64,000 nucleotides of DNA, taken from the IMG/VR virus record IMGVR_UViG_3300032562_000004, positions 1-64,000 of that record. One strand, given 5' to 3'. The translations under genes and the position numbers were made by a program. Positions within the stretch are counted from its first letter, which is position 1. Every line of letters starts with the position of its first letter. This document shows, piece after piece, positions 29,298-62,527 of the stretch. The notes below the pieces were generated by a model. The model saw only the letters and a list, made by a program, of their open reading frames with translations. It was not told the DNA's origin and did not search any database.

Positions 29298-29597
29298 TTA
29301 AATATTTGGAGGCTTTCTATGACTCATACCCATCATCACAGGATTGTGTGCCTTCTTCCTCTTTCTTAAATCAACACCAGGTTCACCACCTTTGCCACCA
29401 GAACCAGCGATTGCACCACCGCCAACCACATTAGTTGGACCCGCAGACATTGCGCCACCACCCATACCATCTTCTTTTACACAAGAATCTTTTGAATATT
29501 CTTTTGTGCCAACGGCAGTATATCCAGTCCTGCAGGCTTTCTTTAAATCGCCTGTGGGTTTCTTAACTGCTTCTGAAAATTGTTTAAATGTTTTCAT
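29298..29597 (-). CDS. small internal head protein
   Basis: MKTFKQFSEA resembles the T4 capsid-targeting sequence; Gly-rich. Confidence 0.65.
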   Translation of the reverse strand: MKTFKQFSEAVKKPTGDLKKACRTGYTAVGTKEYSKDSCVKEDGMGGGAMSAGPTNVVGGGAIAGSGGKGGEPGVDLRKRKKAHNPVMMGMSHRKPPNI

Positions 29598-30004: not shown

Positions 30005-30036
30005 AAAAAACGGAGACAGCCTAGGCCATCTCCGTT
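30005..30036 (-). terminator. rho-independent terminator
   Basis: AACGGAGA/TCTCCGTT stem followed by a T-tract on the minus strand. Confidence 0.75.
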
Positions 30037-30045: not shown

Positions 30046-30675
30046 TTAAATACCAGCGAAATATGTGCCAGAGTTACTTGTGTTACCGGACAATGTGTTA
30101 GCTGCAGTTGGATTAGCAAGAGCAACCAAAACTTCATTTTGAACACGACCAGCACGACCGCCAGTAAATGTTCTTGTACGAACCCAACCGGCATGTGGAA
30201 CAGAACCTATATTAAACTGGTTTGTACCATTGGCTACACCAGCATATACTGCATTGGCCAAACGAGTTGGAGTCACCAATACTGTATCATTGTTATATGT
30301 GGTATCATAAGTTTTGTTTGTATTGTAGGTGATAGCGGTATCGAATGTAGCAACTGCACCAGCGGGTGTAGTATTAAAGGAACCATTTGTCAATACAACG
30401 TTGTTACCACTAACAGAAGCAACTTGTGTGTTAGAAGCAAAGAATCCTGGATATCCGTTACCTGCTGTTCCAGTAACAAAATACACATATTGTCCTGCTG
30501 TAATACCTACGTTGGCAGCACTATTTGGTCCACCATCATAAACTGTTAAAGTAATAACGGTATTACCAATAGCAGTGGTATTGGCAGTAGTTGCGGTTAC
30601 GGTTTGTCTTACTTCACGCTCACGATCCCATTTAGGTTTCTGATTGTGATTATCTGTATTTCCCCATGTTGGCAT
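30046..30675 (-). CDS. virion structural protein
   Basis: MPTWGNTD...HAGWV...GGRAGRVQNEVLVAL; T/N/G-rich; late promoter GATAAATA at 30710-30717. Confidence 0.75.
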   Translation of the reverse strand: MPTWGNTDNHNQKPKWDREREVRQTVTATTANTTAIGNTVITLTVYDGGPNSAANVGITAGQYVYFVTGTAGNGYPGFFASNTQVASVSGNNVVLTNGSFNTTPAGAVATFDTAITYNTNKTYDTTYNNDTVLVTPTRLANAVYAGVANGTNQFNIGSVPHAGWVRTRTFTGGRAGRVQNEVLVALANPTAANTLSGNTSNSGTYFAGI

Positions 30676-30717
30676 TATTTTCTCCTTGATGAGCCTTTGG
30701 TTATAGTACTATTTATC

Positions 30718-32145
30718 TTATTTGTTTTCTACTTTTTTGTTGACCGTACCATCATCTTTTTTGTTGCCATTCAAATCTGGTCTTGATTTCATTTGTGGAT
30801 CAATCTCCACGGTATCACGCTTCTCACCAGTCATAGTAGTTCCACCAGACATTACTGCTCTGGCTTTTGGTTCACCATCAGGTAAAGCATTTGGATCTTC
30901 TTTACTTAGTTTTGGATTTTTTCCATTAGGTTTACCAGGAGATGTTTGATTCTTATCATCCTTTTCGTGGTCATACATTTCTTCTTTGACTGGTTTACAT
31001 ACAGATTTTATTGTCTTTAATGTTTTTGACATACCACGTTTTCTTGGTAGAATATCATGGGTATCATCTGTATTATTGGCACCATCAAAACAAGACTGTG
31101 TGGCTGCCTGTGGGTCACCAAAGTTATCTTCGGATACCGGTTTCATACCGACTTTACGTTGCAAGTAACCTTTGAGTCCTTTAACACGCTTCTTAGCAAT
31201 TTCATCAGATTTCTTATGTAGGTCGGCAAAACCCTTGGACATATGTTTACCATGTTCAGCAGCATCACGGTTTGCCTGAGCATTTTTAAGACTGGCTGTA
31301 GATTTATCTTTATAAGAAGCTAGTGTAGATTTTGAGATTTCATCAATCTGTTCAACTTCTTCTTTGGCTAATTGTTTCTTTTTTAACTCAATTTGACCCA
31401 TATGTTGAATTGGTTTTTTCTGTTTTGGCATACGTTTAGACCAATCGTATTTTGCAGCTTTCTTGGCCAATTCATTTTCTTCTTTGTTCAAATGTTTCTG
31501 TAAACGGTCAATAGCGGAAGTCATGCCTTCACCAGTCTTAGATTGTTTCTTTTGAATCTCATCATGTTTCTTGGCACGTTCTGCTGCATCTTGACGGAAC
31601 TTATCTAAAGCAATAGGTTTCTTAACCTCTTCAGGAAAGATTTCTCGGTTTTTGGCTTTGTCGTGAGCAATTTTACTCTGTCTAACATGAGTTGGTGTAG
31701 TACCAGGCATTGGAGTTTTACTCAATGTTTTACTAACAGTTTGTTCTGGTTTTGCATCTTCTTGTATATGATGCTGTTTCCAAATCAAAAATTGCTTAGA
31801 TTTGGAATGAGAAATCTTAACATCTTTAGTAGCAAACTTAGGATTGATGCCATGTGCTGACAGATAACGATCCAAAAGAGCATCTTCACTTACATATTCA
31901 ACTTCCTCAAACTTGTGATCCATGCGCCATTTCTTGAATGTGTTGGATTTAGCATGAGAAATTTTTGTAGCTTTAGATACAAAGTTAGGATTGATACCTT
32001 TGGCTTTTAAATATTGAGATAAAGAACCATCTTCAGCAACTTGATTTGTGGCTGAATACTGACCTAACTGGCCAGGGTTTACATAATTTGTGCCTCTGGC
32101 CGGTTCAGGATTCTGTTTAACTACATCCTTTAATTTCTTTGCCAT
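30718..32145 (-). CDS. internal head polyprotein-like protein
   Basis: Lys-rich; repeated (I/V)xE sites; internal 49-aa duplication. Confidence 0.7.
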   Translation of the reverse strand: MAKKLKDVVKQNPEPARGTNYVNPGQLGQYSATNQVAEDGSLSQYLKAKGINPNFVSKATKISHAKSNTFKKWRMDHKFEEVEYVSEDALLDRYLSAHGINPKFATKDVKISHSKSKQFLIWKQHHIQEDAKPEQTVSKTLSKTPMPGTTPTHVRQSKIAHDKAKNREIFPEEVKKPIALDKFRQDAAERAKKHDEIQKKQSKTGEGMTSAIDRLQKHLNKEENELAKKAAKYDWSKRMPKQKKPIQHMGQIELKKKQLAKEEVEQIDEISKSTLASYKDKSTASLKNAQANRDAAEHGKHMSKGFADLHKKSDEIAKKRVKGLKGYLQRKVGMKPVSEDNFGDPQAATQSCFDGANNTDDTHDILPRKRGMSKTLKTIKSVCKPVKEEMYDHEKDDKNQTSPGKPNGKNPKLSKEDPNALPDGEPKARAVMSGGTTMTGEKRDTVEIDPQMKSRPDLNGNKKDDGTVNKKVENK

Positions 32146-32154
32146 ATTATTCTC

Positions 32155-33537
32155 TTAGTTAGAAATTTTGCCCATCATGGTTTCATTCTTCAACTTTTTG
32201 AAAGCGGAACGAGCCAAATCTTTAGCACGGGACATTGGTGTATGTTTAGCACCAGATTTGTCTGTTACAGTAGCAGGAGATTTCTTCCATGGTGTTTCTT
32301 TATGCCATGAACGCTCGTCAGCTTCTTCATTCTTTTTACCATAATAAGCACCTAAAGCCATTTTCTTACGTTCAGCTTTAGATTTACCAGCAAACTTAGG
32401 ATTTTTAGAATGTATGAAATCATGAATCCAATCACCAGCATCAGCATCTTTAGAAAGAACTTCGTTAATCATTGCATCAAGTTCAACATCAGTTGCTGAT
32501 TCCATTTTAAGATTTGGAAGATTAACATGGGGTTCTTTTGCTTTGATAGACTTACGAGCAGTAGTTTCTTCAGCATCTTTTACGGCAGGAGCTTTCATCT
32601 CACCATCAGTTTTCAACTGTAATTTATAAGATTTAAATTCATTTGCATTTCCACCTTTTACACGACCACGAATCATATCTGTGGTAACTTCATTTGGTTG
32701 TGCTGCTGGTGTAGTAACTTCTGATTCAGATAATTCAACTCCTTCTTTTAATGTGGACAAATGTTTATCCAAACTAGAAAAATTACTTGTGCTATCACCA
32801 TGAGCCTTAGATGATTTTGAACCTGCAGGATAGTGGTGCCATTCACCATAACGGTTAATAGAAACTTCACCTTTGGTTGGATGTTTCATTCCTGCACCAT
32901 AAGTGGTTCTTTTAAATTCCATACCATGATTTTTAGCAATAGTATCAAGGTTATCTTCATTCAATTCGACTTCTTCATTGCGTGCTTTAGCAAGATTCTC
33001 TGGATGTGAAATTGTATCTTTCTTAGGACCTTTAACATCAGTCATGGTCAAAGGTTTTTCACCTTTTGCTTTACGGAGAAAAGCAGGAACATCGGACTTA
33101 CGAACTTCTTCACCCATGTTATTGTCGGTGAAAGTCTCTTGTGGACCACTACCCTTGTTTTCTTTAATCTTTGCTTTTGCTTTTTCTTTCCACTTATGTG
33201 CCAAAGTCATTTCTTCTGCATGGTGCATACTTTTCTCATGACCTTTTACTTCTTTTTTAGCAATATTCTTTGCTTCAGGTTCAGTAACACATGAACCATC
33301 TTCTTCCTTCATTTCTTTAGCTTTAGGACCTTTGAGTTTATCCACATCATGTGATGTTTGGTCTTTATGTGCCTTAGCAGAATTACCATAACGGTGACCA
33401 AGTACCTTTGTACCTGTAGGAGTAGCAATCTTGGTAGATTTCTTTTCAGGTTCTAACAATAATTTTTTATCTTCTTCAGCAATAACACTATTAACAGCAT
33501 CAATCATGGATTGGGTAATTTTACTTTTTGTGAACAT
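32155..33537 (-). CDS. internal head polyprotein-like protein
   Basis: K/E-rich; EEVELNE, EGVELSE; FIHSKNPKFAGKSK motif. Confidence 0.7.
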   Translation of the reverse strand: MFTKSKITQSMIDAVNSVIAEEDKKLLLEPEKKSTKIATPTGTKVLGHRYGNSAKAHKDQTSHDVDKLKGPKAKEMKEEDGSCVTEPEAKNIAKKEVKGHEKSMHHAEEMTLAHKWKEKAKAKIKENKGSGPQETFTDNNMGEEVRKSDVPAFLRKAKGEKPLTMTDVKGPKKDTISHPENLAKARNEEVELNEDNLDTIAKNHGMEFKRTTYGAGMKHPTKGEVSINRYGEWHHYPAGSKSSKAHGDSTSNFSSLDKHLSTLKEGVELSESEVTTPAAQPNEVTTDMIRGRVKGGNANEFKSYKLQLKTDGEMKAPAVKDAEETTARKSIKAKEPHVNLPNLKMESATDVELDAMINEVLSKDADAGDWIHDFIHSKNPKFAGKSKAERKKMALGAYYGKKNEEADERSWHKETPWKKSPATVTDKSGAKHTPMSRAKDLARSAFKKLKNETMMGKISN

Positions 33538-33549: not shown

Positions 33550-35442
33550 TTATTTGTTCTTTTTCTTCTTTTTAACTATTTCAATACCAATATTTCTGTT
33601 GGGGTCTTTATAGGTATCCATGCCCTCTTTGTTGTCGGCACCACCTAGTGTACCACCTAGACCGGATTCAACATCATTTTGAAAGCCGTTATATTCTTTA
33701 ATGGTCTTTCTAAATTTCTTAAATTCTTTCTTTGGAGCAGTATAAGCACTATCTCCTAATGGATTTGGTGTGATACCTGCCGGCATTGCTGTGCTAGCAG
33801 GATTTGCGTTACTATATTCTTCACCTTCACTATATGTCTGATTGCCTAATCCAGCACCGCCAGTTAAACCACTACCGTTTGTTCTTGTATTCCAAGTATT
33901 GCCTAGGCCGTCAGGACGACCAAGAGCTGATTCTTTACCAGACTTGTCGATACCACGTTTCTTTAGTTTGATTTTGTCTTTGTCTTGCTGGAAGTTGCTT
34001 TCTTTGGCTTTGTTGTAGACTTTCGTGATTGGCTGGCTTTCTTCGTAGGCTGCGTGCCACGCACCGCCGGAGTGGCCTTTGTTGAAGTTGTCTTTTCTGG
34101 CGCCCGTGTTGCCTTTAACTTGGTCTTGTCCAGGGGGAACAATGGATCCTTGGTTGTCGGGTTTGATGTCGGCTGGACCTTTTGCTCTTGGACTGGAGTA
34201 ATTGGTTTTAACTTTAAGAAATCGATTATTCGTTTTAACATTATTTTCTTCCTCAATTTTAAATTTACGATTCAGCCAATCTTCAGCCGTTTCGTTTACG
34301 GTATTTGAATCAAGAAAAACTTTAGTGTTTTCATATACTTCATGAATATCATATTCTTTAGTACGGATATCACCCGTATTATCGAAAACAATAAAATTTT
34401 TAAATGATTCGGTGAAATATTTAGTATTTCTCTGTGATTTAGACCATTTGTCCTGTCTGACGGATTCTACCATCATTCTGGACAACAGAGAATTACGCTC
34501 TTTACTTACTTCATCGGTGGTATTCACAAAAATCATCATAGTATCATATCCAAGACTTTCCAATTCTTCTTTGATATGTGAAATTCTATCTTTATCATCA
34601 GCTGGACCATTAATAATCAATGGACCACGGTTACGAATAGCTTCTCTACGGAAATCATTGGTTTTTTCAGATAGTTTTTGTTTATCACCCAAATACTCTT
34701 GTGCTTGAATAAAGTTTAATTCTACAATCTTGGATTCAGCAATAGCTTCACGAATAATAATATCTTTACCTGAACCTGGACCACCAGTTACAAAGATTGC
34801 TTTGAATTGCCCGTGGTTATATGATTCGTGTAATCCCATACCTTTGCGAGTATCATTCATCAACTCTTTAGCGTGTGTATCGGATACATGAGCAGGAACA
34901 CCTTTACGAAACTCATCAAAGTTTTTATTCTTTGCGTGTTCTCTCATCTTGGTGCCAGATACACCTTCGGATCCCTCAGCATCAGGATCACGGTGGCCAG
35001 CGGAATGTACTGTTATCTTTTTAAAATGATAAGGTACTTTACCTTCTTTATTGGGTTTACCGTTATATTTGTTTAATGAATCTTTAAATTCTTTGACACG
35101 GTCCAAACCAACAACAACATGAAGGTGAGTTACACCTTGTTTATGTAACTTTTCAGCGTGACTAAAAATGGAAGGATGTTCTTTTGAAGATTTCTCGATA
35201 TTAGTATCCGGAGAATACCGCTTCAGAGCTTTAACCTTCTGTGCGCCGGATAAAGGATTCTTCTTAGCATCTTGTGTATGAGATACAATAACATGATGTG
35301 AACCACCAACATCCTTAGCAATTTCTTTAACCTTATCGATTACTTTTAAATGTCCTGTGGTTGGAGGATTCATCCGACCATAAGTCATCACGGCATGTTT
35401 ACCTGTATCTTTTTCTTCAGATAATTCTAAGAATGATTTCAT
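33550..35442 (-). CDS. HxGH nucleotidyltransferase fused to P-loop kinase domain
   Basis: TYGRMNPPTTGH; VVGLDRV; SGTKMR; AIFVTGGPGSGKD; MKSFLELSEE N-terminus. Confidence 0.8.
   Translation of the reverse strand: MKSFLELSEEKDTGKHAVMTYGRMNPPTTGHLKVIDKVKEIAKDVGGSHHVIVSHTQDAKKNPLSGAQKVKALKRYSPDTNIEKSSKEHPSIFSHAEKLHKQGVTHLHVVVGLDRVKEFKDSLNKYNGKPNKEGKVPYHFKKITVHSAGHRDPDAEGSEGVSGTKMREHAKNKNFDEFRKGVPAHVSDTHAKELMNDTRKGMGLHESYNHGQFKAIFVTGGPGSGKDIIIREAIAESKIVELNFIQAQEYLGDKQKLSEKTNDFRREAIRNRGPLIINGPADDKDRISHIKEELESLGYDTMMIFVNTTDEVSKERNSLLSRMMVESVRQDKWSKSQRNTKYFTESFKNFIVFDNTGDIRTKEYDIHEVYENTKVFLDSNTVNETAEDWLNRKFKIEEENNVKTNNRFLKVKTNYSSPRAKGPADIKPDNQGSIVPPGQDQVKGNTGARKDNFNKGHSGGAWHAAYEESQPITKVYNKAKESNFQQDKDKIKLKKRGIDKSGKESALGRPDGLGNTWNTRTNGSGLTGGAGLGNQTYSEGEEYSNANPASTAMPAGITPNPLGDSAYTAPKKEFKKFRKTIKEYNGFQNDVESGLGGTLGGADNKEGMDTYKDPNRNIGIEIVKKKKKNK
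33963..34241 (-). CDS. putative overprinted basic protein in an alternative frame
   Basis: GAGGA RBS 8 nt before ATG; MLKRIIDFLKLKP...TKKASQSRKSTTKPKK; locally GC-rich. Confidence 0.45.
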   Translation of the reverse strand: MLKRIIDFLKLKPITPVQEQKVQPTSNPTTKDPLFPLDKTKLKATRAPEKTTSTKATPAVRGTQPTKKASQSRKSTTKPKKATSSKTKTKSN

Positions 35443-36563
35443 GCAGGTTTATGTTCCATATGTTCTGATTTATCGGTATAATGTATATCTTTATGATCTT
35501 CACTTGGAAGTGTTACCGTTCCTTTGGGAGATTTATTTGCCGGACGGCCACCAGCAGAAATTGATATTCTAGCAACCGCCATTTTCTTTTTTGTTACTTT
35601 ATGGTGTCCATGTATAGTAACAGAATTTCCTTTAGCTGTAGGATCCACATGTAAATTTTCAAAATGATGTAAATATTCAGCAACATGGCCATGAGCATCA
35701 TATGTGTGATGGCCACGTTCCTGGCCTGCTTTAGAATGACTTTTTGGATAAGTTATTTGTCTAGAAACGATATGTTTCAAATGTGTTTCTGGAGATACAG
35801 CATCCGATACGGTTTTGTGTAATTCATTATGTGATTTTTGTGAAAGACCATGTCTTATATCATGAGCAATACTAGTATTCATTTCAAAAGAAGATTTTTT
35901 AATATTGGATGCTTTTTCTTGATCTTCTTTATTTGAAGAATCTCTTAATGCTTTATATTTGTCATGTGAATCTTCATGCAAATTTGTCTTTATTGTTTCT
36001 CCGTGTTTTTCTGTGTGGTGACTCAAACTTTTACCACTCATTTTACTTAACGAATCTAAACCCAAGTTTGAATAATTTACACTACCACTACCCGTTTTAA
36101 CAGAAATTGCTACTTTATTTTCATTTCTATTTTTTCTTTTATGTGATTTGCTTGTTGTAACAATTAAATCAGCTTTTGAATTTTTATCAGCTACACCGGT
36201 CTCACTTTGATGGTCTGATGGTTGTGAGGTCCATACAGTTTTTTTAACTTTACCGTGGCCATGTTTCTCTAAATGAGATTCTATATTTTTAGCGGCTCTG
36301 GCAGCATTTTTTTGAGAAGTTTTGTGTCCTTCAGCCTTCTCATAATTTTCTCCATGAGCTTTCTTTGAAAGCTTATCATGTGTTTGTTCTGGAGTTTTAC
36401 CTTCAGCACGATAACTCTCCATATGTTTTCCACCATTAAGATGTTGGCCAACTTGTAATTCTCTTAATTTTCCTACTGTGTCGGCACCTTCACCCGTGGA
36501 AGCTTCTAATAATAATTCTTCTTCTAGATATTCTTCATTTAGCCAAGTTTTAAATCTTTTCAT
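35439..36563 (-). CDS. His-rich PD-(D/E)xK-like protein
   Basis: KADLIV...AISVK motif; MKRFKTWLNEE N-terminus. Confidence 0.65.
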   Translation of the reverse strand: MKRFKTWLNEEYLEEELLLEASTGEGADTVGKLRELQVGQHLNGGKHMESYRAEGKTPEQTHDKLSKKAHGENYEKAEGHKTSQKNAARAAKNIESHLEKHGHGKVKKTVWTSQPSDHQSETGVADKNSKADLIVTTSKSHKRKNRNENKVAISVKTGSGSVNYSNLGLDSLSKMSGKSLSHHTEKHGETIKTNLHEDSHDKYKALRDSSNKEDQEKASNIKKSSFEMNTSIAHDIRHGLSQKSHNELHKTVSDAVSPETHLKHIVSRQITYPKSHSKAGQERGHHTYDAHGHVAEYLHHFENLHVDPTAKGNSVTIHGHHKVTKKKMAVARISISAGGRPANKSPKGTVTLPSEDHKDIHYTDKSEHMEHKPA

Positions 36564-37765
36564 TTTCTTACCTTTAACAAATTTTGTTTAGCAAATTCAG
36601 CACGATTAACCAATTTAGTAGGTTCTTCTTTACCACCTTCTGGTTTATGGTTTACCACAAAACCTTCAGGTTTGGATTTCTTACCATCAATGTGATGTTG
36701 ATAGTGTCCTTCGTGTGTTTCTAAAGACTTCACCAAAGTATTTTTGGCTTGGTGTAAATGATGGTGCATTGAGAATAGGTTACCATAGTGTTCTTTGTGT
36801 TTTTCAACATGAGCAATTTGGTGTTTACCTTCGTTACGTTTTTCTTCTTTACTTTTATCTGTTTTGACCTTGGCAGCCATCTTTTCATGTTCACCGTGTA
36901 AATGTTCTTTAAAACCTTTAACACTTGGAACTTCATCGTGTCTTACTGTCTTGTTTATGTATGTGGCAAGGTGGCCATGTTCTCCACTATGTTTTGGATG
37001 AACGGCATTATACATCTTATGACCATGAGTATCATGAATATCTTTAGCGGCATTCATGTGTTTATGGAACTCTTTTTCACGTTCAGCAGTATGTTTTACC
37101 TTGCTGGTATCGTGTTCAGCGCCATGAATATGGACATCTGGATGTTCTTTGAATTTACTTACATCAACATGGGGTGAAGCGTGTTTCATTTCATGGTCGT
37201 ATTCGTGGTGTACTACCACACCAACTTTAGACTTTTTAATCTTTTCTGCTTCTTTACCTTTGGCAGTATAGGTAATAGTGTTTGGAGTAAAAGAAACATC
37301 ACCTTTAGCCTCAACGATATAACTTTCGTGTAGGTGTTTGGTATCAGCATGGTGCATTAAGTCACCTTGAAATACGCCATGTTTAGGTGTTACTTTAGGT
37401 AGATGTTTGAGTGCGTGTTTAAGTGTGTGTGCTAGACCTGGAGCGTGGCCATGATTTCTATCGATGTCCGCTTCAGTATGATTGATTTTTGGATTCTTAT
37501 TGAAGGCAGATTTGGTTGCCACAAAGAATTTACCATTCTTAGGATGATGACCAAAAACAATCGATGGTGAACCGTCATATTTCATGGTCAGATTTGTATT
37601 TTTATGACCACCAGTCATATGTGCATGAGCTTTCATCAAAGCTGCATGAGCATGTTCAAAACCTTCGTGACCATGCATCAACGGTCTATCTTCAGCATGA
37701 TGAATATGTTTCAACTCCGAACTCTGTTCGGCCTCTTCTTTTAAGAATGATTTAAATGATAACAT
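36560..37765 (-). CDS. His-rich ligase-like nucleotidyltransferase (KxDG)
   Basis: TMKYDGSPSIVFG, FFVATKSAFNK, QGDLM, PEGFV, KLVNRAEF; MLSFKSFLKEE N-terminus. Confidence 0.75.
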   Translation of the reverse strand: MLSFKSFLKEEAEQSSELKHIHHAEDRPLMHGHEGFEHAHAALMKAHAHMTGGHKNTNLTMKYDGSPSIVFGHHPKNGKFFVATKSAFNKNPKINHTEADIDRNHGHAPGLAHTLKHALKHLPKVTPKHGVFQGDLMHHADTKHLHESYIVEAKGDVSFTPNTITYTAKGKEAEKIKKSKVGVVVHHEYDHEMKHASPHVDVSKFKEHPDVHIHGAEHDTSKVKHTAEREKEFHKHMNAAKDIHDTHGHKMYNAVHPKHSGEHGHLATYINKTVRHDEVPSVKGFKEHLHGEHEKMAAKVKTDKSKEEKRNEGKHQIAHVEKHKEHYGNLFSMHHHLHQAKNTLVKSLETHEGHYQHHIDGKKSKPEGFVVNHKPEGGKEEPTKLVNRAEFAKQNLLKVRK

Positions 37766-37810: not shown

Positions 37811-37818
37811 TATTTATA
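37811..37818 (-). promoter_or_regulatory. T4-type late promoter
   Basis: exact TATAAATA 46 nt upstream of the ATG; GCAAC-N8-GTTGC hairpin in the leader. Confidence 0.8.
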
Positions 37819-37888: not shown

Positions 37889-38608
37889 TTAAAACTTGGT
37901 TCCTTCAAAATCCATCCAATAAGTGGCCATTTTACCTTTACCTTCAAGTAAGTAAAAAGGTAGAGTATGGATTAAACCCCGACTGGAGTTATAGTATATC
38001 AGGTCTTTAGGTCCACGGTCAAGCGAAAATGCAAAATGTGTTGTTCCTGTATCACCCCCGATAAAGATTTCGGCAGTCTGGATATGGTTGATATTTTCCA
38101 TGAAGCCAAAACTATATTTGAAATGTATTGGAATCAATTCTTCATGGCCAAATGGATATTTACCAACACAGATAAGTTTTTCGTAATCATCATATTCTGG
38201 CGCACTATACTTATTACAAATGGTTTCAAGTAATTTTGGTGGCCAATTTCTGTAGGTATTATAAGGCGCATCAAACAATGGAAAAATAACAATCTTCTTT
38301 TCCATTTCTAATTTGTTTGGAACTGTTACTAAATCTCCAGAGATATCTCTAAAGTCCCAAACATTCACTCTACGCCATGGCAGAGTTTCTTGTCCTTCGA
38401 AATCAGAAAAGTAATTAGTTACCAATAAAAGAAATGTATAAAATTCCTGTACATATTTCTCAGAACTTATTGCTTCCGGCTTTAAATGAAATCGAATCTG
38501 TGGATTATTATTAGTTTTTCTAATATGTTCCAATACATTACAGACACCAAGTAAATCACCATTGCGTAATGGTCCACCAAAAGTACCAGGTTCAATATTA
38601 ATAATCAA
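37889..38608 (-). CDS. glycosyltransferase, GT9-like
   Basis: IFIGGDTGTTHFA resembles the GT9 xxIGxDSGxxHLA motif. Confidence 0.6.
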   Translation of the reverse strand: MIINIEPGTFGGPLRNGDLLGVCNVLEHIRKTNNNPQIRFHLKPEAISSEKYVQEFYTFLLLVTNYFSDFEGQETLPWRRVNVWDFRDISGDLVTVPNKLEMEKKIVIFPLFDAPYNTYRNWPPKLLETICNKYSAPEYDDYEKLICVGKYPFGHEELIPIHFKYSFGFMENINHIQTAEIFIGGDTGTTHFAFSLDRGPKDLIYYNSSRGLIHTLPFYLLEGKGKMATYWMDFEGTKF

Positions 38609-39348
38609 AGTAGTGCCTCCAAATCTTTAGCGTGAACTAGTTTTGCTTTACGGTTCAAATAGAAATGTTTTTCAAATACTTTATTGATATCCTTACCATC
38701 GTCCCAAGATACATTATCACCTACACGGAACTCAGGTTTCCAATCTTCTGCTTTCCATACACAATAAAGTGGAACATTACAGAGGTCTGCCAACATACCG
38801 ACACCAGTAAAATTGGTGATAAATGGTTTCTTTAGATTCTTAATGATGTAAGCATTGGTCAACATATCATTATCAAAATTAATAAACTCACAATCTTTTA
38901 AATAAGATAATACATGAGTTTCTCTACGATTATCAATCTCACCAACCGCCCATCTATCACCAACATAATAGGCATCTTTAATTTCAATATCCATCTCTGG
39001 TGTTAATACAACAAATTTATCATTTACTTCAAACATCAAATCATATTTGTCCCTTAACCAATTCTCATATCGACAGGTTTCAATCGGTCTATCAGGATCA
39101 CCTTTAGTTTCACGGCTTGGCCACGAACTTAATTGAATCATATCGCCATAAGGAATGATATCATCATCAAATTCAACATCAGAAAACAAATCTTGGTACA
39201 TTAAGAATTCTTTAATGCCTTTAAATTTCTTCGTTGAACCTTTGAGTATCAAAGAATATTTACCATATGATTTAGTAAGACCTGACAACACAGGCATTGT
39301 GTTTAAAAAATCACCAAGGTTAGCAGTTCCAGTTACATAAATTTTCAT
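38605..39348 (-). CDS. glycosyltransferase-like (GT9-type N-terminus)
   Basis: NLGDFLNTMPVL motif. Confidence 0.5.
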   Translation of the reverse strand: MKIYVTGTANLGDFLNTMPVLSGLTKSYGKYSLILKGSTKKFKGIKEFLMYQDLFSDVEFDDDIIPYGDMIQLSSWPSRETKGDPDRPIETCRYENWLRDKYDLMFEVNDKFVVLTPEMDIEIKDAYYVGDRWAVGEIDNRRETHVLSYLKDCEFINFDNDMLTNAYIIKNLKKPFITNFTGVGMLADLCNVPLYCVWKAEDWKPEFRVGDNVSWDDGKDINKVFEKHFYLNRKAKLVHAKDLEALL

Positions 39349-40139
39349 TTACTAAATTCCTTAAAAGCAACAAACCAGTCCTGTTCGGAAACTGGATGTA
39401 ATTCAAACAATTCGGGTTTCAACAAATAGGACATTAACAATAAAGTTTGGTCATCATCAACCAATCCATTCTTGACCAATTCATCCATACTATGAGCAAC
39501 CAACTTCTGTAATGTTGGCCAATTCTCTTTGCTAGCAACAATCATTGGTCCTGTAATATGTACATCGTTGTTGGCAATAACATCTTGAATGATAGTGCCT
39601 TCTTGCCAATCTTTAATATTGAATAAATGAATTTTATCTTTATCAAATGGATAACTCCAAACTTGAACATCATTTAAGGTTACTTCATCACGACAATAAC
39701 CAAAATCGAGCCACGCAATTAAATCATTATTAATTGTGTTTCGTCTAATAGCCTCAACAACAAAACTAGATTTTAGTGCGTTTACGATAACATAATCAGC
39801 ATTCCAATATTCTGGATTGCGTACTTGCATGGGATTTATTTTTGCTTGATATTCTGGATCCTGTTGAACTTTGGAAACCATTTCACGGAAAACACTAAAA
39901 GATTCTTTAAAGTCCATCGTGATAATATCTGTTGGTCTATCTTCTCTTAACTCTTTAATTTTATCGACCATATCGGCTGATGTAAATATGGTCATTTCAT
40001 TTTCGAGTTTGGCCATGTGACCAAATCTTTGCAAATAAGTTTCTGTTGTTCGTTGTAGATAGTGTGGAAGATTTTTATCTGGTGTCCATTCACCACGACC
40101 AATATCAAAGAAGGCCGTTACGATGCTAATTTCACTCAT
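39345..40139 (-). CDS. HtrL/YibB (WlaTC)-family glycosyltransferase-like protein
   Basis: SIVTAFFDIGRGEW, K..FV..AI, AWLDFG, VDDDQ. Confidence 0.75.
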   Translation of the reverse strand: MSEISIVTAFFDIGRGEWTPDKNLPHYLQRTTETYLQRFGHMAKLENEMTIFTSADMVDKIKELREDRPTDIITMDFKESFSVFREMVSKVQQDPEYQAKINPMQVRNPEYWNADYVIVNALKSSFVVEAIRRNTINNDLIAWLDFGYCRDEVTLNDVQVWSYPFDKDKIHLFNIKDWQEGTIIQDVIANNDVHITGPMIVASKENWPTLQKLVAHSMDELVKNGLVDDDQTLLLMSYLLKPELFELHPVSEQDWFVAFKEFSK

Positions 40140-40864
40140 ACCCAATAATACCTTTTATAATTATTAACAATTTCAATGTGGATTGGCTGACTCATAACAA
40201 AATCATCATAATCATATCCATCATTCTTATGGTGGTGTGTATCCGTCAAATAAGGATTAACACTATAATCTTTTCCACACAACATATAATAAACTACCAT
40301 ATAACAATCCATGAATCCTAATGGCTGATAGTGAATCTGAAACCAATCATGATTCTTTTTAAACCATTCGGTTACTTTATCATAGTTCTCTAAGAATGTT
40401 GATACTTTAAATATTGAACCTCCACCACAACCATATTGATTTGTGATTGGTTTCTTTCCAGAGAAATCTGTTATACTACCTATGATATCATCAGGAATTA
40501 TATTACCAATTTTGATATCATGTCCTGCCATTTCCCAAGTAGAATCAACTGTGATTGGTTTTTTAATCCAAACATCGTCTTCCATCATCATTATATGTGA
40601 TGTTGGTGCTTGTTGGCAAGCAGCTCTAAATCTATCCAACCATTGTAATGTTTTGTCGGCATCATAACTTGGATAACCTAATTTAGAAACTGAACGAATG
40701 TAATCACAGTTATATTTTTCAGCAATATCAGATAAATCATCTGCTGCATCCGACAATAACATATAATAGGAATCAGGATGGTGTTTACGGACTTGTTCTA
40801 CAACTTTTTCAGTAGAAACTTTTTTGCCTGCTGAGGCAAGATGGCAAAAAGAAATATCAGGCAT
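40136..40864 (-). CDS. putative glycosyltransferase (GT-A)
   Basis: IMMMEDDVW DxD-like motif; GCGGGSIF. Confidence 0.6.
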   Translation of the reverse strand: MPDISFCHLASAGKKVSTEKVVEQVRKHHPDSYYMLLSDAADDLSDIAEKYNCDYIRSVSKLGYPSYDADKTLQWLDRFRAACQQAPTSHIMMMEDDVWIKKPITVDSTWEMAGHDIKIGNIIPDDIIGSITDFSGKKPITNQYGCGGGSIFKVSTFLENYDKVTEWFKKNHDWFQIHYQPLGFMDCYMVVYYMLCGKDYSVNPYLTDTHHHKNDGYDYDDFVMSQPIHIEIVNNYKRYYWV

Positions 40865-41423
40865 ATTTTACCCAAAAGATAATACTATCGGTCATATTTG
40901 AAGGTTCTCTGAGGTCAACAACACCACAAACCATATTAGGTGGAACTAAAGTTCTATAATCTTCTGTCCATTCCATTTGACCAATATCTTCAATAATAAA
41001 CATACCACCACGGTTTAACTTTGGTAAATATAAACTAAGTGATTGTAAATGACTTTTTTTGGTGTGAGGACCATCATCAATGATAATATCAAAATTAGGC
41101 AAAGAATCGGCAAACTCTTTTTTATATCCGTCAGCGTAAATTATTTTAACTCGTGGATAAGGTTCACAATTTGTTTTTGCACCAAAATCATATGGGTCTA
41201 CACCATAGAGGTCAGCATTAGGAAAGTAATGATGCCAAAGTGCCATACTTCCGCCACGATGAATTCCTAATTCTAATAAACGAATATTTTTATCTTGATA
41301 TGGCAAAAGAGCTTCATCATAGAAACCACTACAATATTTGTGGTTAAATTCTTTATCTGTACCAAATTCATAATGTGTATCATTACGAATATTATACTTA
41401 ATCATAATATCAACTAAACTCAT
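40857..41423 (-). CDS. class I SAM-dependent methyltransferase
   Basis: LLELGIHRGGS; YGVD; DIIIDDGPH; GGMFIIED. Confidence 0.85.
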   Translation of the reverse strand: MSLVDIMIKYNIRNDTHYEFGTDKEFNHKYCSGFYDEALLPYQDKNIRLLELGIHRGGSMALWHHYFPNADLYGVDPYDFGAKTNCEPYPRVKIIYADGYKKEFADSLPNFDIIIDDGPHTKKSHLQSLSLYLPKLNRGGMFIIEDIGQMEWTEDYRTLVPPNMVCGVVDLREPSNMTDSIIFWVKYA

Positions 41424-42436
41424 TACATTAACCTATCTTTCCATGTTTTAGGTGTTTTATCTGATACAATTTCCAATGGATATGTATAGTCGAAAGGTTT
41501 AGGTCCTTTCTTCTTAACATACGCCACGGTTTCTTGAATGGCTTTTCTTAAATCTGTTTTAGTTTCATAATTTAATAATTTACGAGCTTTATCTGCTGAA
41601 CAAGAAGCGTGTTTAACTTCTCTTGGTCGGTCTGGCATATGAATTGGTGGCCATGTGTTATCTTTTCTCATATCACACTCTTTATTCACCAAAGCAGCCA
41701 ACTCAGCAATAGTAATTGTACCTTCATCAGGTCCAATGTTAATAATCTCACTCTTAATTTTTGGATCTAATGCCATTTTTTCTAAACAATTAATACAGTC
41801 ACTAACATAAGAAAAACAACGAGTTTGTTTACCATCGCCATAAATGATTGCAGGTTTACTTTGCAAATTACGATTAATCATAATACTCATAACATTACGG
41901 AACGGATCATCATAACGCTGACGAGGACCAACAATATTATGTGGCACAGCAATATTCCATTCCATACCATGAGTTTCACAAAGAGCTTTTAATACTTCTT
42001 CACCAGCAACTTTAGCTATGCCATACGGATCTACAGGTCTAGGAGTCATTTTTTCATGGAATGGTGCCTTTTGGTCACCATATCGTGCCATAGATGTGCA
42101 ATAAACAAATCTTTTTACTTTATTTTGGATTGCTGCAGAAATAGTAGATACACTTGCTTCAAAAATATTTCGTGTAATGAAACTAGGAGAGAATACAGAC
42201 AGTCCTTCATGTGCCGTTGCGGCAGTATGAATAACGATATCACAACCTTCCATAGCATAGGTCATCTTTTCATTATCACAACAATCAATGATAAAAAGTT
42301 TTGCTTTTTTTGGAACATTATCACGATAACCACCAATCAAGTTATCATTACCAATAACTTCATGTCCAAGTTCAATCATTCTATCAGCAAGATGGCTACC
42401 TAGAAATCCTGCTAGTCCAGTAATAAAAATTTTCAT
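41423..42436 (-). CDS. NAD-dependent epimerase/dehydratase
   Basis: TGLAGFLG; TSMARYG; YGIAK; HNIVGP. Confidence 0.9.
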   Translation of the reverse strand: MKIFITGLAGFLGSHLADRMIELGHEVIGNDNLIGGYRDNVPKKAKLFIIDCCDNEKMTYAMEGCDIVIHTAATAHEGLSVFSPSFITRNIFEASVSTISAAIQNKVKRFVYCTSMARYGDQKAPFHEKMTPRPVDPYGIAKVAGEEVLKALCETHGMEWNIAVPHNIVGPRQRYDDPFRNVMSIMINRNLQSKPAIIYGDGKQTRCFSYVSDCINCLEKMALDPKIKSEIINIGPDEGTITIAELAALVNKECDMRKDNTWPPIHMPDRPREVKHASCSADKARKLLNYETKTDLRKAIQETVAYVKKKGPKPFDYTYPLEIVSDKTPKTWKDRLM

Positions 42437-42963
42437 TATACTCTCTTAATCAAAGTCATTCCATTGCAATTTGTTCTTCGTTCAACTAATTGCCATTGTG
42501 GATTAGTATCCAAGAATTCTTGAATCGCTTTCCATACACCTCCTTCACCACCTTGGCCACGTGCACCAAATAATTCTGTATCATGGAATAATATATATTT
42601 GCTCACCTTATCAGCATGTAAATCTAATTCACCTTTTACTTGTTCATATGAATGATAACTATCCACAAGCATAATATCTGTTGGTGCAATTTCAGTTTCT
42701 AATGTAGAACAAACATGAAGTGTAACATTTCTACCAGCGGCTCTCGCTTCGTTAAAGAATTGAGTAGTAACCTCATAAGGTGAAATTTCGTAACTATGAA
42801 GTTCTACATCTTGCCTTAAAAATCCTCTGGTACTTTGTGCATATCCAACACCAAGTTCAGTCGCATGTTTACACTCAGAAGTTAGTTCTGAAATCCATGG
42901 TAAATGCTCGTGCATATCGGTTGGTCTGGCACAAGCATCTAAGTATTCTTGTTCAAAGTTCAT
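42436..42963 (-). CDS. SAM-dependent methyltransferase
   Basis: TELGV; DIMLVDSYH; YILFHDT. Confidence 0.75.
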   Translation of the reverse strand: MNFEQEYLDACARPTDMHEHLPWISELTSECKHATELGVGYAQSTRGFLRQDVELHSYEISPYEVTTQFFNEARAAGRNVTLHVCSTLETEIAPTDIMLVDSYHSYEQVKGELDLHADKVSKYILFHDTELFGARGQGGEGGVWKAIQEFLDTNPQWQLVERRTNCNGMTLIKRV

Positions 42964-42964
42964 T

Positions 42965-43801
42965 TTATGTACTGTATATAAATAATTGTGATTCATCTTC
43001 TTGTCCATATTTTTCTTGGACAAACTTCTTTAAAACTGGTACCCTATCGTATTGGTGTACAATTGGAAAAACTTTATCGGTATAATCTTTTAAAATACCA
43101 TCTTCAAAAAATGGTTCAACGATAAGTAGATTTGGCCTAAACTGTTCAATCTTGGATGGATCCATGATTGTTCCTAACTCAGCAGCCCATTGTGTTGTTT
43201 TAGTTACAACATCTTTAAACGGTTGTGTGTTGATTAGAACATTGAATACTGCTTGGTCTACGATAGGAATTGGTCGGTTGATTCCGTTTGTGAAAATATG
43301 AAACACCATATCTTTTACATATTCTGATTTACCACCAAAGGTTCCTACATTAAAGATTTCATTGTTTTTAAATTTATCATACACATATGGACCATAAGCT
43401 TGATATAAATTCTCATTACCCCAAGGTTCGTCTTTATATTTCAAACCTTCAGATGCAATAACCAATTTACGGTCAACTAAGAATTTAAATGGATCTGTTT
43501 GAAAATAAACATCTTTAACATCAGTAGTAACAACATATTGATAATCAAACCAATGATTTTCTAGATATTCATAGATTGATAAAAATCGTAACACATGGAT
43601 CGGTATGTTTTGTACTTGTAACATGGGAACAACAACTACTCCTTGTTCTACCAACCAATCTAGTGTTTCATCTGAAGCGTTACCATAAACCAAAACAACA
43701 TCATTATCACCAGCAACTTCTTTTGCTGAGATAACCCAAGGTTTTAATTGGTTAATGTTATAGTTTGTGAACCCGCCGATGATGAGATTTTTTTGCGCCA
43801 T
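42965..43801 (-). CDS. putative glycosyltransferase
   Basis: VVTTDVKDVYFQTDPF; FNVGT; DQAVFN; IVHQYDR. Confidence 0.7.
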   Translation of the reverse strand: MAQKNLIIGGFTNYNINQLKPWVISAKEVAGDNDVVLVYGNASDETLDWLVEQGVVVVPMLQVQNIPIHVLRFLSIYEYLENHWFDYQYVVTTDVKDVYFQTDPFKFLVDRKLVIASEGLKYKDEPWGNENLYQAYGPYVYDKFKNNEIFNVGTFGGKSEYVKDMVFHIFTNGINRPIPIVDQAVFNVLINTQPFKDVVTKTTQWAAELGTIMDPSKIEQFRPNLLIVEPFFEDGILKDYTDKVFPIVHQYDRVPVLKKFVQEKYGQEDESQLFIYST

Positions 43802-51159: not shown

Positions 51160-51299
51160 AAGAAGTCCTAAATTTTATAAATAGTATATATAATGTTCAT
51201 AAAAAGGTAAAAGTAATGTATTGTGGAATATTAGCTATGAAAACCAACATTACACGATGGCACAATACCAATTGTAAATTAGCTAAAGAAGTCCTCTAG
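51160..51299 (+). pseudogene. miniature remnant of a homing-endonuclease cassette at the gp43 3' end
   Basis: TATAAATA at 51176; frame encodes KVKVMYCG...RWHNTNCK; flanked by direct repeat AAGAAGTCCT (51160, 51286). Confidence 0.7.
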
Positions 51300-53816: not shown

Positions 53817-53817
53817 T

Positions 53818-62105: not shown

Positions 62106-62161
62106 GTTATATTTTACTAAATGGATTATGAAGTTAATCATAATACTATAAAGGACTTTAA

Positions 62162-62524: not shown

Positions 62525-62527
62525 ACA

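What the first reader, a model, noticed from the sequence alone, without database searches (positions are those of the whole stretch)
35439..37765. Extreme histidine enrichment in two putative internal virion proteins
Seen: manual count gives about 59 His in 401 aa (~15%) and about 36 in 374 aa (~10%), dispersed rather than in tracts; neighbouring non-virion genes look normal. Inference: His replaces other surface residues as a pH-switchable charge for DNA co-packaging and release, or for metal buffering inside the capsid.
Basis: partly seen in the sequence, partly recalled or inferred. Interest (0 to 1): 0.6.

Follow-up and report, generated by a model that had tools for sequence, protein, structure and literature searches.

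The report
Histidine-loaded capsid-targeted phage enzymes
Two adjacent late genes of a 236-kb T4-like lake phage encode a ligase-like enzyme and a restriction-nuclease-like enzyme that carry a T4-type capsid-targeting leader and contain 15% and 10% histidine, ten times more than their relatives in cultured phages; why is still open.

Summary
Gene A (36560-37765, minus strand) has 59 His in 401 aa. Gene B (35439-36563, minus strand) has 36 in 374 aa. The genome average is 2.05%, and A and B rank first and second of 296 ORFs.

A is Pfam DUF6267. It has KxDG, EGFV and KLVxR motifs and folds most like RNA/DNA ligases. B folds like the restriction enzymes MspI and HinP1I. Both begin with the pattern of the T4 capsid targeting sequence (aromatic at positions 4 and 7, Leu at 8, Glu at 10). 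Both lie behind a TATAAATA late promoter, and the genome encodes a gp21-type prohead protease. "Internal virion proteins" is therefore plausible, though these are full-size enzymes rather than small DNA-coating proteins.

The enrichment is lineage-specific. Orthologs in six sequenced isolate phages have 1.0-1.5% His. An abundant lake clade has 10-15%, and the wider family spans 1.5-15.4%.

The enrichment also covers the cytidylyltransferase domain of the next gene (8.6%) but stops at its kinase domain (1.1%). Across the family, His trades off mainly against hydrophobic residues, not Lys, and shows no tracts or local clusters.

My best guess is a bulk pH- or metal-titratable switch of charge and fold. 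This is untested, and the His-poor kinase domain argues against a generic capsid-charge role.

The parts
37811..37818 (-). T4-type late promoter consensus TATAAATA, 46 nt upstream of the ATG of gene A, in the only sizeable intergenic gap of this block
   Evidence: The same octamer lies within 130 nt upstream of the A homolog in 67 of 84 related metagenomic loci. The motif is not enriched in the window as a whole (8 found against 9.9 expected), so the evidence is its position and its conservation.
36560..37765 (-). Gene A: 401-aa DUF6267 protein, ligase-like covalent nucleotidyltransferase, 59 His (14.7%), 0 Cys, pI 9.3
   Evidence: Pfam PF19782 at 311 bits, E 1.9e-92, and phrog_455. Nearly invariant K62-x-D64-G65, Q133-G-D135, P161-N-x-x-x-Y166, E367-G-x-V370, K384-x-x-x-R388. 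AlphaFold model pLDDT 92.3. Best structural matches are RNA ligases (5cot Z 8.7, 9r3w 8.3, 1s68 8.1, T4 Rnl1 7.3), then ATP-dependent DNA ligases.
37736..37765 (-). N-terminal 10 residues of A (MLSFKSFLKE): capsid-targeting-sequence-like leader
   Evidence: The T4 CTS is MKTYQEFIAE (PMC8442874). Residues 4 and 7 direct targeting; 8 and 10 direct processing (PMC9026906). A has F4, F7, L8, E10. M1, F4, L8 and E10 are invariant in close relatives. 110 of 120 close homologs and 66 of 116 diverse family representatives carry the motif. Model confidence is low for residues 1-20.
35439..36563 (-). Gene B: 374-aa MspI/HinP1I-like PD-(D/E)xK fold protein, 36 His (9.6%), 0 Cys, pI 9.3; its start overlaps the stop of A by 4 bases
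   Evidence: No Pfam, PHROG, NCBIfam or PADLOC family, and no match in 50,697 isolate phage records. 51 metagenomic homologs. Model pLDDT 88.7. VIA-align: MspI 1sa3 Z 9.3 and HinP1I 1ynm Z 8.5, next row 5.6; Foldseek HinP1I prob 0.96. Invariant D126, D132, S154, K156, N163, N166, H187.
36534..36563 (-). N-terminal 10 residues of B (MKRFKTWLNE): capsid-targeting-sequence-like leader
   Evidence: F4, W7, L8, E10. 39 of 51 B homologs carry the motif, some as close to T4 as MKTFSTFILE. A and B are the only 2 of 296 ORFs in the genome that match the strict pattern.
34813..35442 (-). Cytidylyltransferase-like (HxGH nucleotidyltransferase) domain, residues 1-210 of the 630-aa protein; 18 His (8.6%); near-CTS start MKSFLELSEE
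   Evidence: PF01467 E 8.8e-7, phrog_3041 E 6e-61, TIGR00125. His by region. This domain is fused to DUF6267 in at least 35 family representatives, in either order.
33550..34812 (-). Rest of the 630-aa protein: P-loop kinase/ATPase-like domain (residues 211-400, 1.1% His) and Gly/Asn/Lys-rich tail (401-630, 0.9% His)
   Evidence: Zeta_toxin-like match E 3.7e-4, below Pfam's cut-off, and phrog_2071 ATPase. His by region.
30046..33537 (-). Three further genes of the same transcription unit (460 aa, 475 aa, 209 aa). The first two are very hydrophilic, Lys-rich (16%) and basic (pI 9.2-9.6), with 3.4-4.1% His and no known family
   Evidence: They have the 3rd and 4th lowest hydrophobic content of the 174 ORFs of at least 150 aa; B is lowest and A is 6th.
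30009..30036 (-). Intrinsic-terminator-like hairpin (12-bp stem, 6 GC pairs, T run) that closes the unit

Best explanation
The two genes open a late operon (37818 to 30009, minus strand) of a T4-like lake phage.

What the proteins are. Gene A is a ligase-like nucleotidyltransferase (DUF6267). Gene B is an MspI/HinP1I-like nuclease. The next gene starts with a cytidylyltransferase-like domain. The three domains form one functional module, because in other phages they occur fused in a single polypeptide.

Where they go. A and B carry a T4-type capsid targeting sequence. They are most likely built into the prohead core, clipped after Glu10 by the gp21-type protease, and delivered with the DNA as ready-made nucleic-acid-processing enzymes.

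What the histidine does. In this lineage the module's domains have been loaded with histidine: about 55 extra in A, spread over the whole fold, gained largely at the expense of hydrophobic residues, with the Lys-based charge untouched. I infer that this is a selected bulk property. Neutral imidazoles let the enzymes fold and work at cytoplasmic pH. Protonation (A goes from +10 at pH 8 to +59 at pH 5.5) or metal loading would turn them into loosened polycations. That state would keep a nuclease and a ligase inert beside the packed genome and ease their passage through the tail.

Shown: the composition, the families and folds, the fusions, the leader motif, the promoter and the phylogenetic pattern. 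Inferred: encapsidation, enzymatic activity, and the whole switch mechanism.
For: Composition.

Identity.

One module:
- DUF6267-cytidylyltransferase fusions in at least 35 representatives.
- B-DUF6267-cytidylyltransferase triple fusions P0291 and P0286.
- The same synteny (gp43-UvsX-gp41 ... DUF6267-cytidylyltransferase) in P-HM2, S-PM2, HTVC008M, Melnitz and C48C1.

Packaging:
- Leader motif matches the T4 CTS at its four functional positions.
- The motif is conserved in two unrelated families.
- Late promoter is conserved upstream.
- A gp21 homolog is present.
- The whole operon is basic and extremely hydrophilic.
- The T4 literature reports that CTS-tagged foreign proteins, including nucleases, are packaged, ejected and refold.

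Selection on a bulk property:
- 30 or more His are invariant within the clade at 72-87% identity.
- About 20 His positions are shared with relatives at 35-55% identity, and the rest vary.
- His content differs greatly between sister lineages, for example 15.4% against 6.0%.
- His in DUF6267 correlates with His in the fused partner, rho 0.81.
- There are no local His clusters and no helix-face bias.
- His trades against LIVFMWY, rho -0.79, p 1e-31; Lys is not replaced.

Titration range.
Against: - No proteomic evidence shows either protein in virions.
- The kinase domain and tail of the 630-aa protein, and the middle of fusion P0175, are His-poor although they share a polypeptide with His-rich domains. 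A capsid-environment effect should reach them too.
- The leader motif is no more common in His-rich than in His-poor family members: 7.2% against 6.3% mean His, p 0.10.
- Leader-bearing orthologs of Melnitz and C48C1 have 1.2-1.5% His.
- In the freshwater cyanophage S-CRM01 the DUF6267 ortholog and the neighbouring proteins with CTS-like starts are His-poor. Neither fresh water nor packaging is sufficient.
- B is missing from 51 of 67 related loci that had room for it.
- The structural Z-scores (8-9) lie in the range where only the fold, not the function, is supported.
Confidence: 0.4

Rival explanations
1. Metal sponge or metal-dependent assembly. The dispersed imidazoles bind Zn, Ni, Co, Cu or Mn. 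This could supply or buffer metal for three metal-dependent phosphoryl/nucleotidyl transferases, bridge the three domains into a complex, or keep redox-active metals off the packed DNA.
For: - His is the main ligand of these metals.
- The enrichment is shared by exactly the three domains that occur fused.
- Several deeply conserved His flank catalytic motifs: GHHP after motif I, GDLMH at motif III, and the family-invariant H186.
- The clade lives in lakes, and one His-rich relative comes from a different sample type, both settings where trace metals differ from the open ocean (the metal argument itself is from general knowledge).
Against: - There are no His tracts, no excess of HxH or HxxxH, no His-His clustering along the sequence and no helix-face stripes.
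- There is not one Cys in 775 residues.
- The P-loop kinase domain, also metal-dependent, is His-poor.
- Loss of hydrophobic residues is not predicted by this idea.
Confidence: 0.25
2. The proteins are not packaged. They are cytoplasmic late enzymes (end healing and sealing, or DNA/RNA modification). The N-terminal motif serves something else, and the His serve substrate binding, pH-independent nucleic-acid contacts or condensate formation at the replication or packaging site.
For: - The operon lies next to the replication genes.
- The DUF6267 orthologs of the cyanophages P-HM2, S-PM2 and S-CRM01 lack the leader and are annotated only as hypothetical, whereas a nearby gene is called a virion structural protein.
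- Leader and His content are not correlated.
- His enrichment is specific to domains, not whole polypeptides.
Against: - The motif matches the four functionally mapped positions of the T4 CTS. It stands at the extreme N-terminus of two unrelated families and nowhere else among 296 ORFs.
- The late promoter is conserved.
- The extreme hydrophilicity and basic pI of the whole operon resemble ejection proteins.
Confidence: 0.25
3. The enrichment has no function of its own. It reflects mutational or compositional drift in fast-evolving accessory genes, or an annotation or frame artefact.
For: His content is evolutionarily labile between sister lineages. The block as a whole is compositionally odd: AT skew of -0.19 to -0.22 on the + strand and Lys-rich proteins.
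Against: - The frames are long, conserved and match a Pfam family at 311 bits.
- The models are confident.
- More than 30 His are invariant across 21 sequences at 72-87% identity.
- Codon usage is normal and there are no repeats.
- The rest of the genome, the kinase domain in the same gene included, is unaffected.
- The trait recurs in distant lineages with normal neighbours.
Confidence: 0.05

Closest known systems
T4 internal proteins IPI, IPII, IPIII and other CTS-targeted head proteins
   Same: An N-terminal 10-residue leader with aromatic residues at 4 and 7, an aliphatic residue at 8 and Glu at 10. A gp21-type protease in the genome, late expression, basic pI, and a very variable cargo behind a conserved leader.
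   Different: T4's IPs are described as nonessential, highly basic proteins that are cleaved once. Here the cargoes are 42-46 kDa folded enzymes with 10-15% His on top of 13-14% Lys. Presence in the virion is not shown.
ATP-dependent RNA and DNA ligases (covalent nucleotidyltransferase superfamily: Naegleria Rnl, Trl1 ligase domain, T4 Rnl1/Rnl2, archaeal and viral DNA ligases)
   Same: KxDG lysine motif, EGxV and KxxxR motifs in the same order, and an adenylyltransferase-domain fold as the top structural matches.
   Different: No sequence-level match to any solved ligase. Z is only 7-9. There is a helical insert of about 120 residues (227-348), no OB or other recognisable C-terminal domain, and a conserved HxxHxED motif at the N-terminus. 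Substrate and nucleotide are unknown.
Type II restriction endonucleases MspI and HinP1I (monomeric PD-(D/E)xK enzymes)
   Same: Best and clearly separated structural matches (Z 9.3 and 8.5 against 5.6 for the next row). An invariant Asp followed about 20 residues later by an invariant S-x-K in a strand.
   Different: 11-12% identity. B is about 120 residues longer, with a helical insert (about 169-256). It carries a capsid-targeting-like leader and sits in a phage late operon with no methyltransferase partner identified. The superposition of catalytic residues was not inspected.
Healing-and-sealing repair systems (T4 Pnkp + Rnl1; bacterial Pnkp/Hen1; fungal Trl1)
   Same: A ligase-like domain combined with a P-loop kinase-like domain and a further nucleotide-handling domain, as neighbours or fusions. 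Trl1 and the Pnkp ligase domain are among the structural matches.
   Different: No phosphoesterase or methyltransferase domain was found. The partner here is a cytidylyltransferase-like HxGH domain and, in some phages, a nuclease. Nothing shows RNA rather than DNA as the substrate.
Histidine-rich metal-binding proteins (Hpn, His-rich tails of HypB/SlyD/UreE) and histidine pH switches of viral fusion proteins and toxins
   Same: Very high His content and a titratable charge in the physiological pH range. The comparison itself rests on general knowledge.
   Different: No His tracts or His-Cys motifs. The His are spread through two confidently folded enzymes. Known pH switches use a few His, not 15% of all residues.

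Membership tests
Pfam DUF6267 (PF19782) | Score above the curated gathering threshold over the full-length profile | tested here: met
   311 bits against a cut-off of 27; profile positions 2-373 of 376.
Covalent nucleotidyltransferases (ligases / capping enzymes) | Motif I KxDG with the nucleotidyl-accepting lysine, followed in order by motifs III, IIIa, IV and V | tested here: met
   K62-Y-D-G, G134-D135, P161-N...Y166, E367-G-F-V, K384-L-V-N-R388. All are invariant or at least 90% conserved in 63 diverse sequences. Assigning these to the classical motifs is my reading.
Covalent nucleotidyltransferases (ligases / capping enzymes) | Adenylyltransferase-domain fold | tested here: inconclusive
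   Top VIA-align rows are RNA ligases, Z 8.7-7.3 over 180-209 residues, and many DNA ligases follow. Z lies in the range the tool calls middling, and Foldseek E-values are 0.08 or worse.
Covalent nucleotidyltransferases (ligases / capping enzymes) | Formation of a covalent enzyme-NMP intermediate and strand joining | not testable with these tools
   Needs an adenylylation and nick-sealing assay.
T4-type CTS-targeted internal head proteins | N-terminal leader with the residues needed for targeting (4, 7) and for processing (8, 10) | tested here: met
   A has F4, F7, L8, E10. B has F4, W7, L8, E10. T4 has Y4, F7, I8, E10. The motif is conserved in both families.
T4-type CTS-targeted internal head proteins | Prohead protease of the gp21 family in the same genome, and late transcription | tested here: met
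   PF03420 match of 111 bits at genome 88230-88688. TATAAATA lies 46 nt upstream and is conserved in 67 of 84 relatives.
T4-type CTS-targeted internal head proteins | Physical presence of the processed protein in mature heads and ejection into the host | not testable with these tools
   No isolate and no virion proteome are available. RNA-library contigs of relatives cover 34670-36809, but this does not prove transcription.
MspI/HinP1I-like PD-(D/E)xK endonucleases | Restriction-endonuclease-like core fold | tested here: met
   1sa3 Z 9.3 (194 residues aligned) and 1ynm Z 8.5 (208 aligned), with the next row at 5.6. Foldseek gives HinP1I prob 0.96, TM 0.43-0.45 by target.
MspI/HinP1I-like PD-(D/E)xK endonucleases | Catalytic Asp ... 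(Asn/Gln/Ser)-x-Lys triad in the right strands | tested here: inconclusive
   D132 and S154-x-K156 are invariant in 33 sequences down to 30% identity. Residue-level superposition on the solved enzymes could not be inspected; the catalytic residues of MspI and HinP1I are recalled from memory.
His-rich metal-storage proteins (Hpn-like) | His tracts or repeated HxH / His-Cys motifs in a short, largely unstructured protein | tested here: not met
   The longest run is HHH, occurring once. Pair counts are at shuffle level. There is no Cys, and the models are confidently folded.

The most novel reading that the evidence does not exclude
A large, abundant lineage of uncultured T4-like phages of lakes and other non-marine waters carries an on-board nucleic-acid processing kit (ligase-like, nuclease-like, nucleotidyltransferase) inside the capsid. 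Histidine has replaced much of the hydrophobic core in these enzymes, so that they are conditionally folded. They would be stored as loosened, inactive polycations next to the genome, threaded through the tail, and snapped into active form by the neutral cytoplasm. This would be a proteome-scale 'histidine latch' not described for any virion protein.
Probability: 0.2. Interest if true: 0.85.

Novelty: new variant of a known kind. Interest (0 to 1): 0.65.

Why it matters
**Composition.** Folded enzymes with 10-15% histidine at conserved positions, maintained across a large clade, are very unusual. They offer a natural experiment on how far His can stand in for hydrophobic and polar residues.

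**Function of a conserved family.** DUF6267 and its cytidylyltransferase partner sit in the same place next to the replication genes in every T4-like cyanophage, pelagiphage and methylophage examined here, yet they have no assigned function. This work gives the family three things:
- a testable biochemical identity (ligase-like, with a lysine nucleotidyl acceptor);
- a frequent nuclease partner;
- in many members, a T4-type capsid address tag.

**Wider consequences if packaging is confirmed.** T4-like phages of aquatic bacteria would then be delivering whole enzymes, not just small anti-restriction proteins. That bears on how damaged or nicked virion DNA is rescued and on early host takeover. 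It would also supply a ready-made leader for protein delivery by non-coli T4-like phages.

Tried and rejected
- **Near-identical DNA in isolate phages:** none found.
- **B against isolate phages by tblastn:** none found.
- **Profiles of A and B against all PDB sequences:** nothing useful.
- **B profile against the DruA-like protein at 45525-46634 and against the HTVC008M gene upstream of DUF6267:** no relationship (prob below 1%).
- **Pfam scan of all 33 B homologs:** only one stray DUF7108_C hit.
- **NCBIfam and PADLOC:** nothing for A or B.
- **Complex prediction for A with B:** no verdict, score 0.00. This is not evidence either way.
- **Literature:** no paper mentions DUF6267 or 'cytitidyltransferase' with cyanophage. 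A search for histidine-rich phage proteins returned nothing relevant.
- **Simple habitat rule (fresh water gives His-rich):** rejected as a general rule, because freshwater cyanophage S-CRM01 is His-poor. Habitat labels for the family representatives could not be obtained from contig names.
- **His next to Lys/Arg or Asp/Glu as engineered switch pairs:** no enrichment. His mildly avoids K/R in A, z = -3.
- **His stripes on helix faces:** none.
- **Mutational, codon or repeat artefact:** rejected.
- **Photosynthesis gene psbA as a host clue:** absent.
- **Solvent exposure of His in the models:** A proxy from His-poor orthologs was used instead.

Full report
**1.

- The region carries two overlapping minus-strand ORFs. 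A is 36560-37765 from the ATG (an upstream GTG at 37792 would add 9 residues). B is 35439-36563.
Neither has any Cys.
- The other ORFs of the window average 2.2% His (binomial P 5e-30 and 4e-13).
- The window is the first 64 kb of a single 235.8-kb virus record. Among its 296 ORFs (mean 2.05% His) A and B are the two richest.
- The His are dispersed. There is no excess of HH, HxH or HxxxH, no His-His clustering within +-4, and no bias to one helix face.
- The DNA has no tandem repeats. His codon choice equals the genome's, and the phage has 31 tRNA genes including one tRNA-His.
Residues 211-400 and 401-630 of the same protein have 1.1% and 0.9%.

**2. The setting**

- The window carries T4-type replication genes: DNA polymerase 51279-53852, UvsX 49162-50238, gp41 helicase 46631-48010, primase 25029-26039 and ribonucleotide reductase.
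- The order gp43-UvsX-gp41 ... DUF6267-cytidylyltransferase is the same in the sequenced phages P-HM2, S-PM2, HTVC008M, Melnitz and C48C1, four of which are classified as Kyanoviridae. S-CRM01, also Kyanoviridae, shows gp41 ... DUF6267-cytidyltransferase.
- No isolate is close: the best protein identity for A is 33%, and B has no match at all.
- Public runs that hold the stretch are lake-water and freshwater metagenomes.
- One of the IMG samples contributing relatives is from ice-covered Quebec lakes.
- The genome has no psbA, so a heterotrophic host is likely.

**3. What the proteins are**

*Gene A*
- A is a full-length member of Pfam DUF6267 (311 bits) and of phrog_455. No paper in the library mentions this family.
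- Alignments with close and distant relatives show nearly invariant K62-x-D-G, G134-D135, P161-N...Y166, E367-G-x-V and K384-x-x-x-R388. I read these as motifs I, III, IIIa, IV and V of covalent nucleotidyltransferases.
- The AlphaFold model is confident (pLDDT 92.3).
- Its best structural matches are RNA ligases: Naegleria Rnl Z 8.7, Trl1 8.3, T4 Rnl2 8.1, T4 Rnl1 7.3. ATP-dependent DNA ligases follow.
- The scores support the fold, not a substrate.

*Gene B*
- B has no family in Pfam, PHROGs, NCBIfam or PADLOC.
- Its model (pLDDT 88.7) matches MspI (Z 9.3) and HinP1I (Z 8.5), well above the next row at 5.6.
- D132 and S154-x-K156 are invariant in 33 homologs down to 30% identity.

*The next gene*
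- It combines a cytidylyltransferase-like HxGH domain, a P-loop kinase/ATPase-like domain and a low-complexity tail.

*One module*
- Among the representatives, DUF6267 is fused to the cytidylyltransferase domain in at least 35 cases, in either order.
- P0291 and P0286 are B-like + DUF6267 + cytidylyltransferase in one chain.
- Elsewhere a GIY-YIG-like gene follows DUF6267.
- B is an accessory member. It occurs in 16 of 86 related loci, and 51 loci had room for it but lack it.

**4. Are they virion proteins?**

- The T4 capsid targeting sequence is MKTYQEFIAE (PMC8442874). Mutational work maps targeting to residues 4 and 7 and processing to residues 8 and 10 (PMC9026906).
- A starts MLSFKSFLKE and B starts MKRFKTWLNE: aromatic at 4, aromatic at 7, Leu at 8, Glu at 10.
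- In the whole genome only these two ORFs fit the strict pattern. The 630-aa protein has a near fit, MKSFLELSEE.
- The motif is invariant among close A relatives. It is present in 110 of 120 of them, in 66 of 116 diverse DUF6267 representatives (some read MLRFKQFIAE or MKTFVEFITE), and in 39 of 51 B homologs.
- The leaders are the low-confidence parts of both models.
- The genome encodes a gp21-family prohead protease.
- The only intergenic gap before A holds TATAAATA, the T4 late-promoter consensus (from established T4 knowledge), 46 nt before the ATG. The octamer lies within 130 nt upstream of A in 67 of 84 relatives.
- A strong terminator at 30036-30009 closes a six-gene unit.
- The first five proteins of the unit are basic (pI 9.2-9.6). 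Among the 174 ORFs of at least 150 aa, B, p475, p460 and A rank 1st, 3rd, 4th and 6th lowest in hydrophobic content, and the 630-aa protein ranks 9th.
- Contigs of relatives from lake RNA libraries cover 34670-36809 and cross both gene junctions. DNA carry-over cannot be excluded.
- I conclude that encapsidation is likely (about 0.6-0.65) but unproven.
- The cyanophage orthologs (P-HM2, S-PM2, S-CRM01) lack the leader.

**5. How the histidine is distributed in evolution**

- Orthologs in six sequenced isolate phages have 1.0-1.5% His.
- The 120 nearest metagenomic proteins (71-86% identity) have 10.3-15.1%, and 80 IMG/VR loci carry close relatives of A (69-98% identity).
- I used the one exhaustive representative search on A. 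The family is of unknown function, and the claim needed a broad sample. It returned 1,816 clusters at E <= 1e-3.
- Among the best 150, His in the DUF6267 domain runs continuously from 1.5% to 15.4%. This list is biased toward His-rich sequences because the query is His-rich.
- I built a tree with all His masked. It puts every isolate in one His-poor clade and the window in a 77-row clade (support 98) that is mostly 4-15% His.
- Sister pairs on that tree can differ greatly: 15.4 against 6.0, 14.5 against 6.4, 7.8 against 1.6. Well-supported branches force at least 13 changes of the 'rich' label. The trait is thus clustered but quantitatively labile.
- Within the window's clade more than 30 His are invariant.
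- About 20 positions are His in most divergent His-rich members (for example 38, 47, 73, 74, 121, 208, 212, 236, 259, 334, 336). The rest differ between lineages.
- In distant lineages DUF6267 alone is His-rich and its neighbours are normal.
- B homologs have 5.8-12.3% His over the whole range of identities.

**6. What the histidine replaces**

- Position by position, A's His fall on sites that are polar in His-poor orthologs in 60% of cases (non-His residues: 61%), hydrophobic in 19% (against 31%), and mixed or aromatic in 21% (against 9%).
- Lys is the residue least often replaced.
- Over 140 DUF6267 domains, each added His is balanced mainly by loss of L, I, F, Y, V and W (summed slope -0.83), with smaller losses of D, R and N. 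K and A rise.
- His and LIVFMWY are anticorrelated (rho -0.79, p 1e-31). A has 22.9% LIVFMWY against 31-33% in the isolates, and B has 19.8%.
- In fusion proteins, His in DUF6267 tracks His in the partner (rho 0.81).
- Within P0175 and the window's 630-aa protein, only the cytidylyltransferase domain shares the enrichment, not the kinase or linker parts.
- The calculated charge of A rises from +10 at pH 8 to +59 at pH 5.5, and that of B from +10 to +41. The isolate orthologs change by about 7-9 units over that range.

**7. Interpretation**

The pattern is conserved yet tunable. It is spread through the fold and shows no metal-site-like sequence clusters. It spares Lys, is paid for by hydrophobic residues, and is shared by the domains that work together. 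This pattern points to selection on a bulk, titratable property of these particular enzymes.

- *Preferred reading.* Conditional charge and fold. The imidazoles are neutral and pack at cytoplasmic pH. Protonation or metal loading gives a loosened polycation. That state would suit storage of a nuclease and a ligase beside 236 kb of packed DNA and their transit through the tail. The T4 literature reports refolding of packaged GFP after ejection. Low ionic strength outside a freshwater virion should lower the pH inside the DNA-filled capsid (my physical argument, not computed here), which could explain why the His-poor orthologs seen here come mostly from marine phages.
- *Points against.* The kinase domain is His-poor. 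The leader-bearing orthologs of Melnitz and C48C1 are His-poor. Freshwater S-CRM01 is His-poor. The leader and His content are not correlated.
- *Alternatives that remain open.* Metal binding, or a cytoplasmic role unrelated to packaging.

**8. Verdict**

The proteins are identified as a ligase-like enzyme and an MspI-like nuclease of a conserved three-domain module. Their status as capsid-targeted proteins is supported by four independent sequence features but not proven. The function of the histidine is unresolved. I rate this a new variant of a known kind (T4-type CTS cargo) with an unusual and widespread compositional adaptation. Interest: 0.65.

Noticed in passing
window 45525-46634 (-): The 369-aa protein directly after the gp41 helicase matches the Druantia defence protein DruA (PADLOC DruA E 4.6e-9; PF14236 on its orthologs; phrog_19197). 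A defence-system domain in a phage replication module is odd.
   Followed up: partly
window 37889-44505 (-): About ten genes lie between the replication genes and the His-rich operon: HtrL_YibB, and on relatives Glycos_transf_2 and Methyltransf_24. The block resembles the variable, cell-wall-related island described for pelagimyophages (PMC7029224). The isolates have no such block at this place.
   Followed up: partly
window 30718-33537 (-): Two proteins of 460 and 475 aa in the same late operon have 16% Lys, pI 9.2-9.6 and GRAVY about -1.1, with no hit in Pfam, PHROGs or NCBIfam. They are candidate further internal or ejection proteins.
   Followed up: no
window 29298-29597 (-): A 99-aa ORF begins MKTFKQFSEA, very close to the T4 capsid targeting sequence but with Ser at 8 and Glu at 9. 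It lies just beyond the operon's terminator.
   Followed up: no
window 62032-63224 (-) and genome 162960-173672: Five tRNA genes lie at the end of the window. The 236-kb genome has 31 in all, including tRNA-His(GTG) and an Ile(TAT)-like tRNA.
   Followed up: partly
L100 (ERZ18242344 NODE_540, 73.9 kb): The contig encoding the His-poor DUF6267 relative P0305 has 6-18 in-frame TAG codons per gene and translates to the recorded protein only with TAG=Gln. It is a stop-codon-recoded T4-like phage.
   Followed up: no
L098 2509-4974 (-) (S-CRM01 gene 130c): In freshwater cyanophage S-CRM01, an 821-aa protein annotated serine/threonine kinase, a 151-aa protein and the cytidyltransferase all start with CTS-like leaders (MISFDQFLSE, MNFSEFLEAIE, MKLFNQFFKE). 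The leader may therefore tag a whole set of enzymes in these phages.
   Followed up: partly
A residues 20-26 (window 37688-37708): A motif H-x-x-H-x-E-D directly after the leader is nearly invariant across the whole DUF6267 family, including His-poor members (HLEHLED in the isolates). Its role is unknown. With H186, these are the only family-wide His.
   Followed up: partly
P0202 residues 379-789; P0216 and P0266 C-terminal parts: Some DUF6267 fusion proteins carry C-terminal regions of 270-410 aa with 12-14% His; P0202's region has no Pfam match.
   Followed up: no
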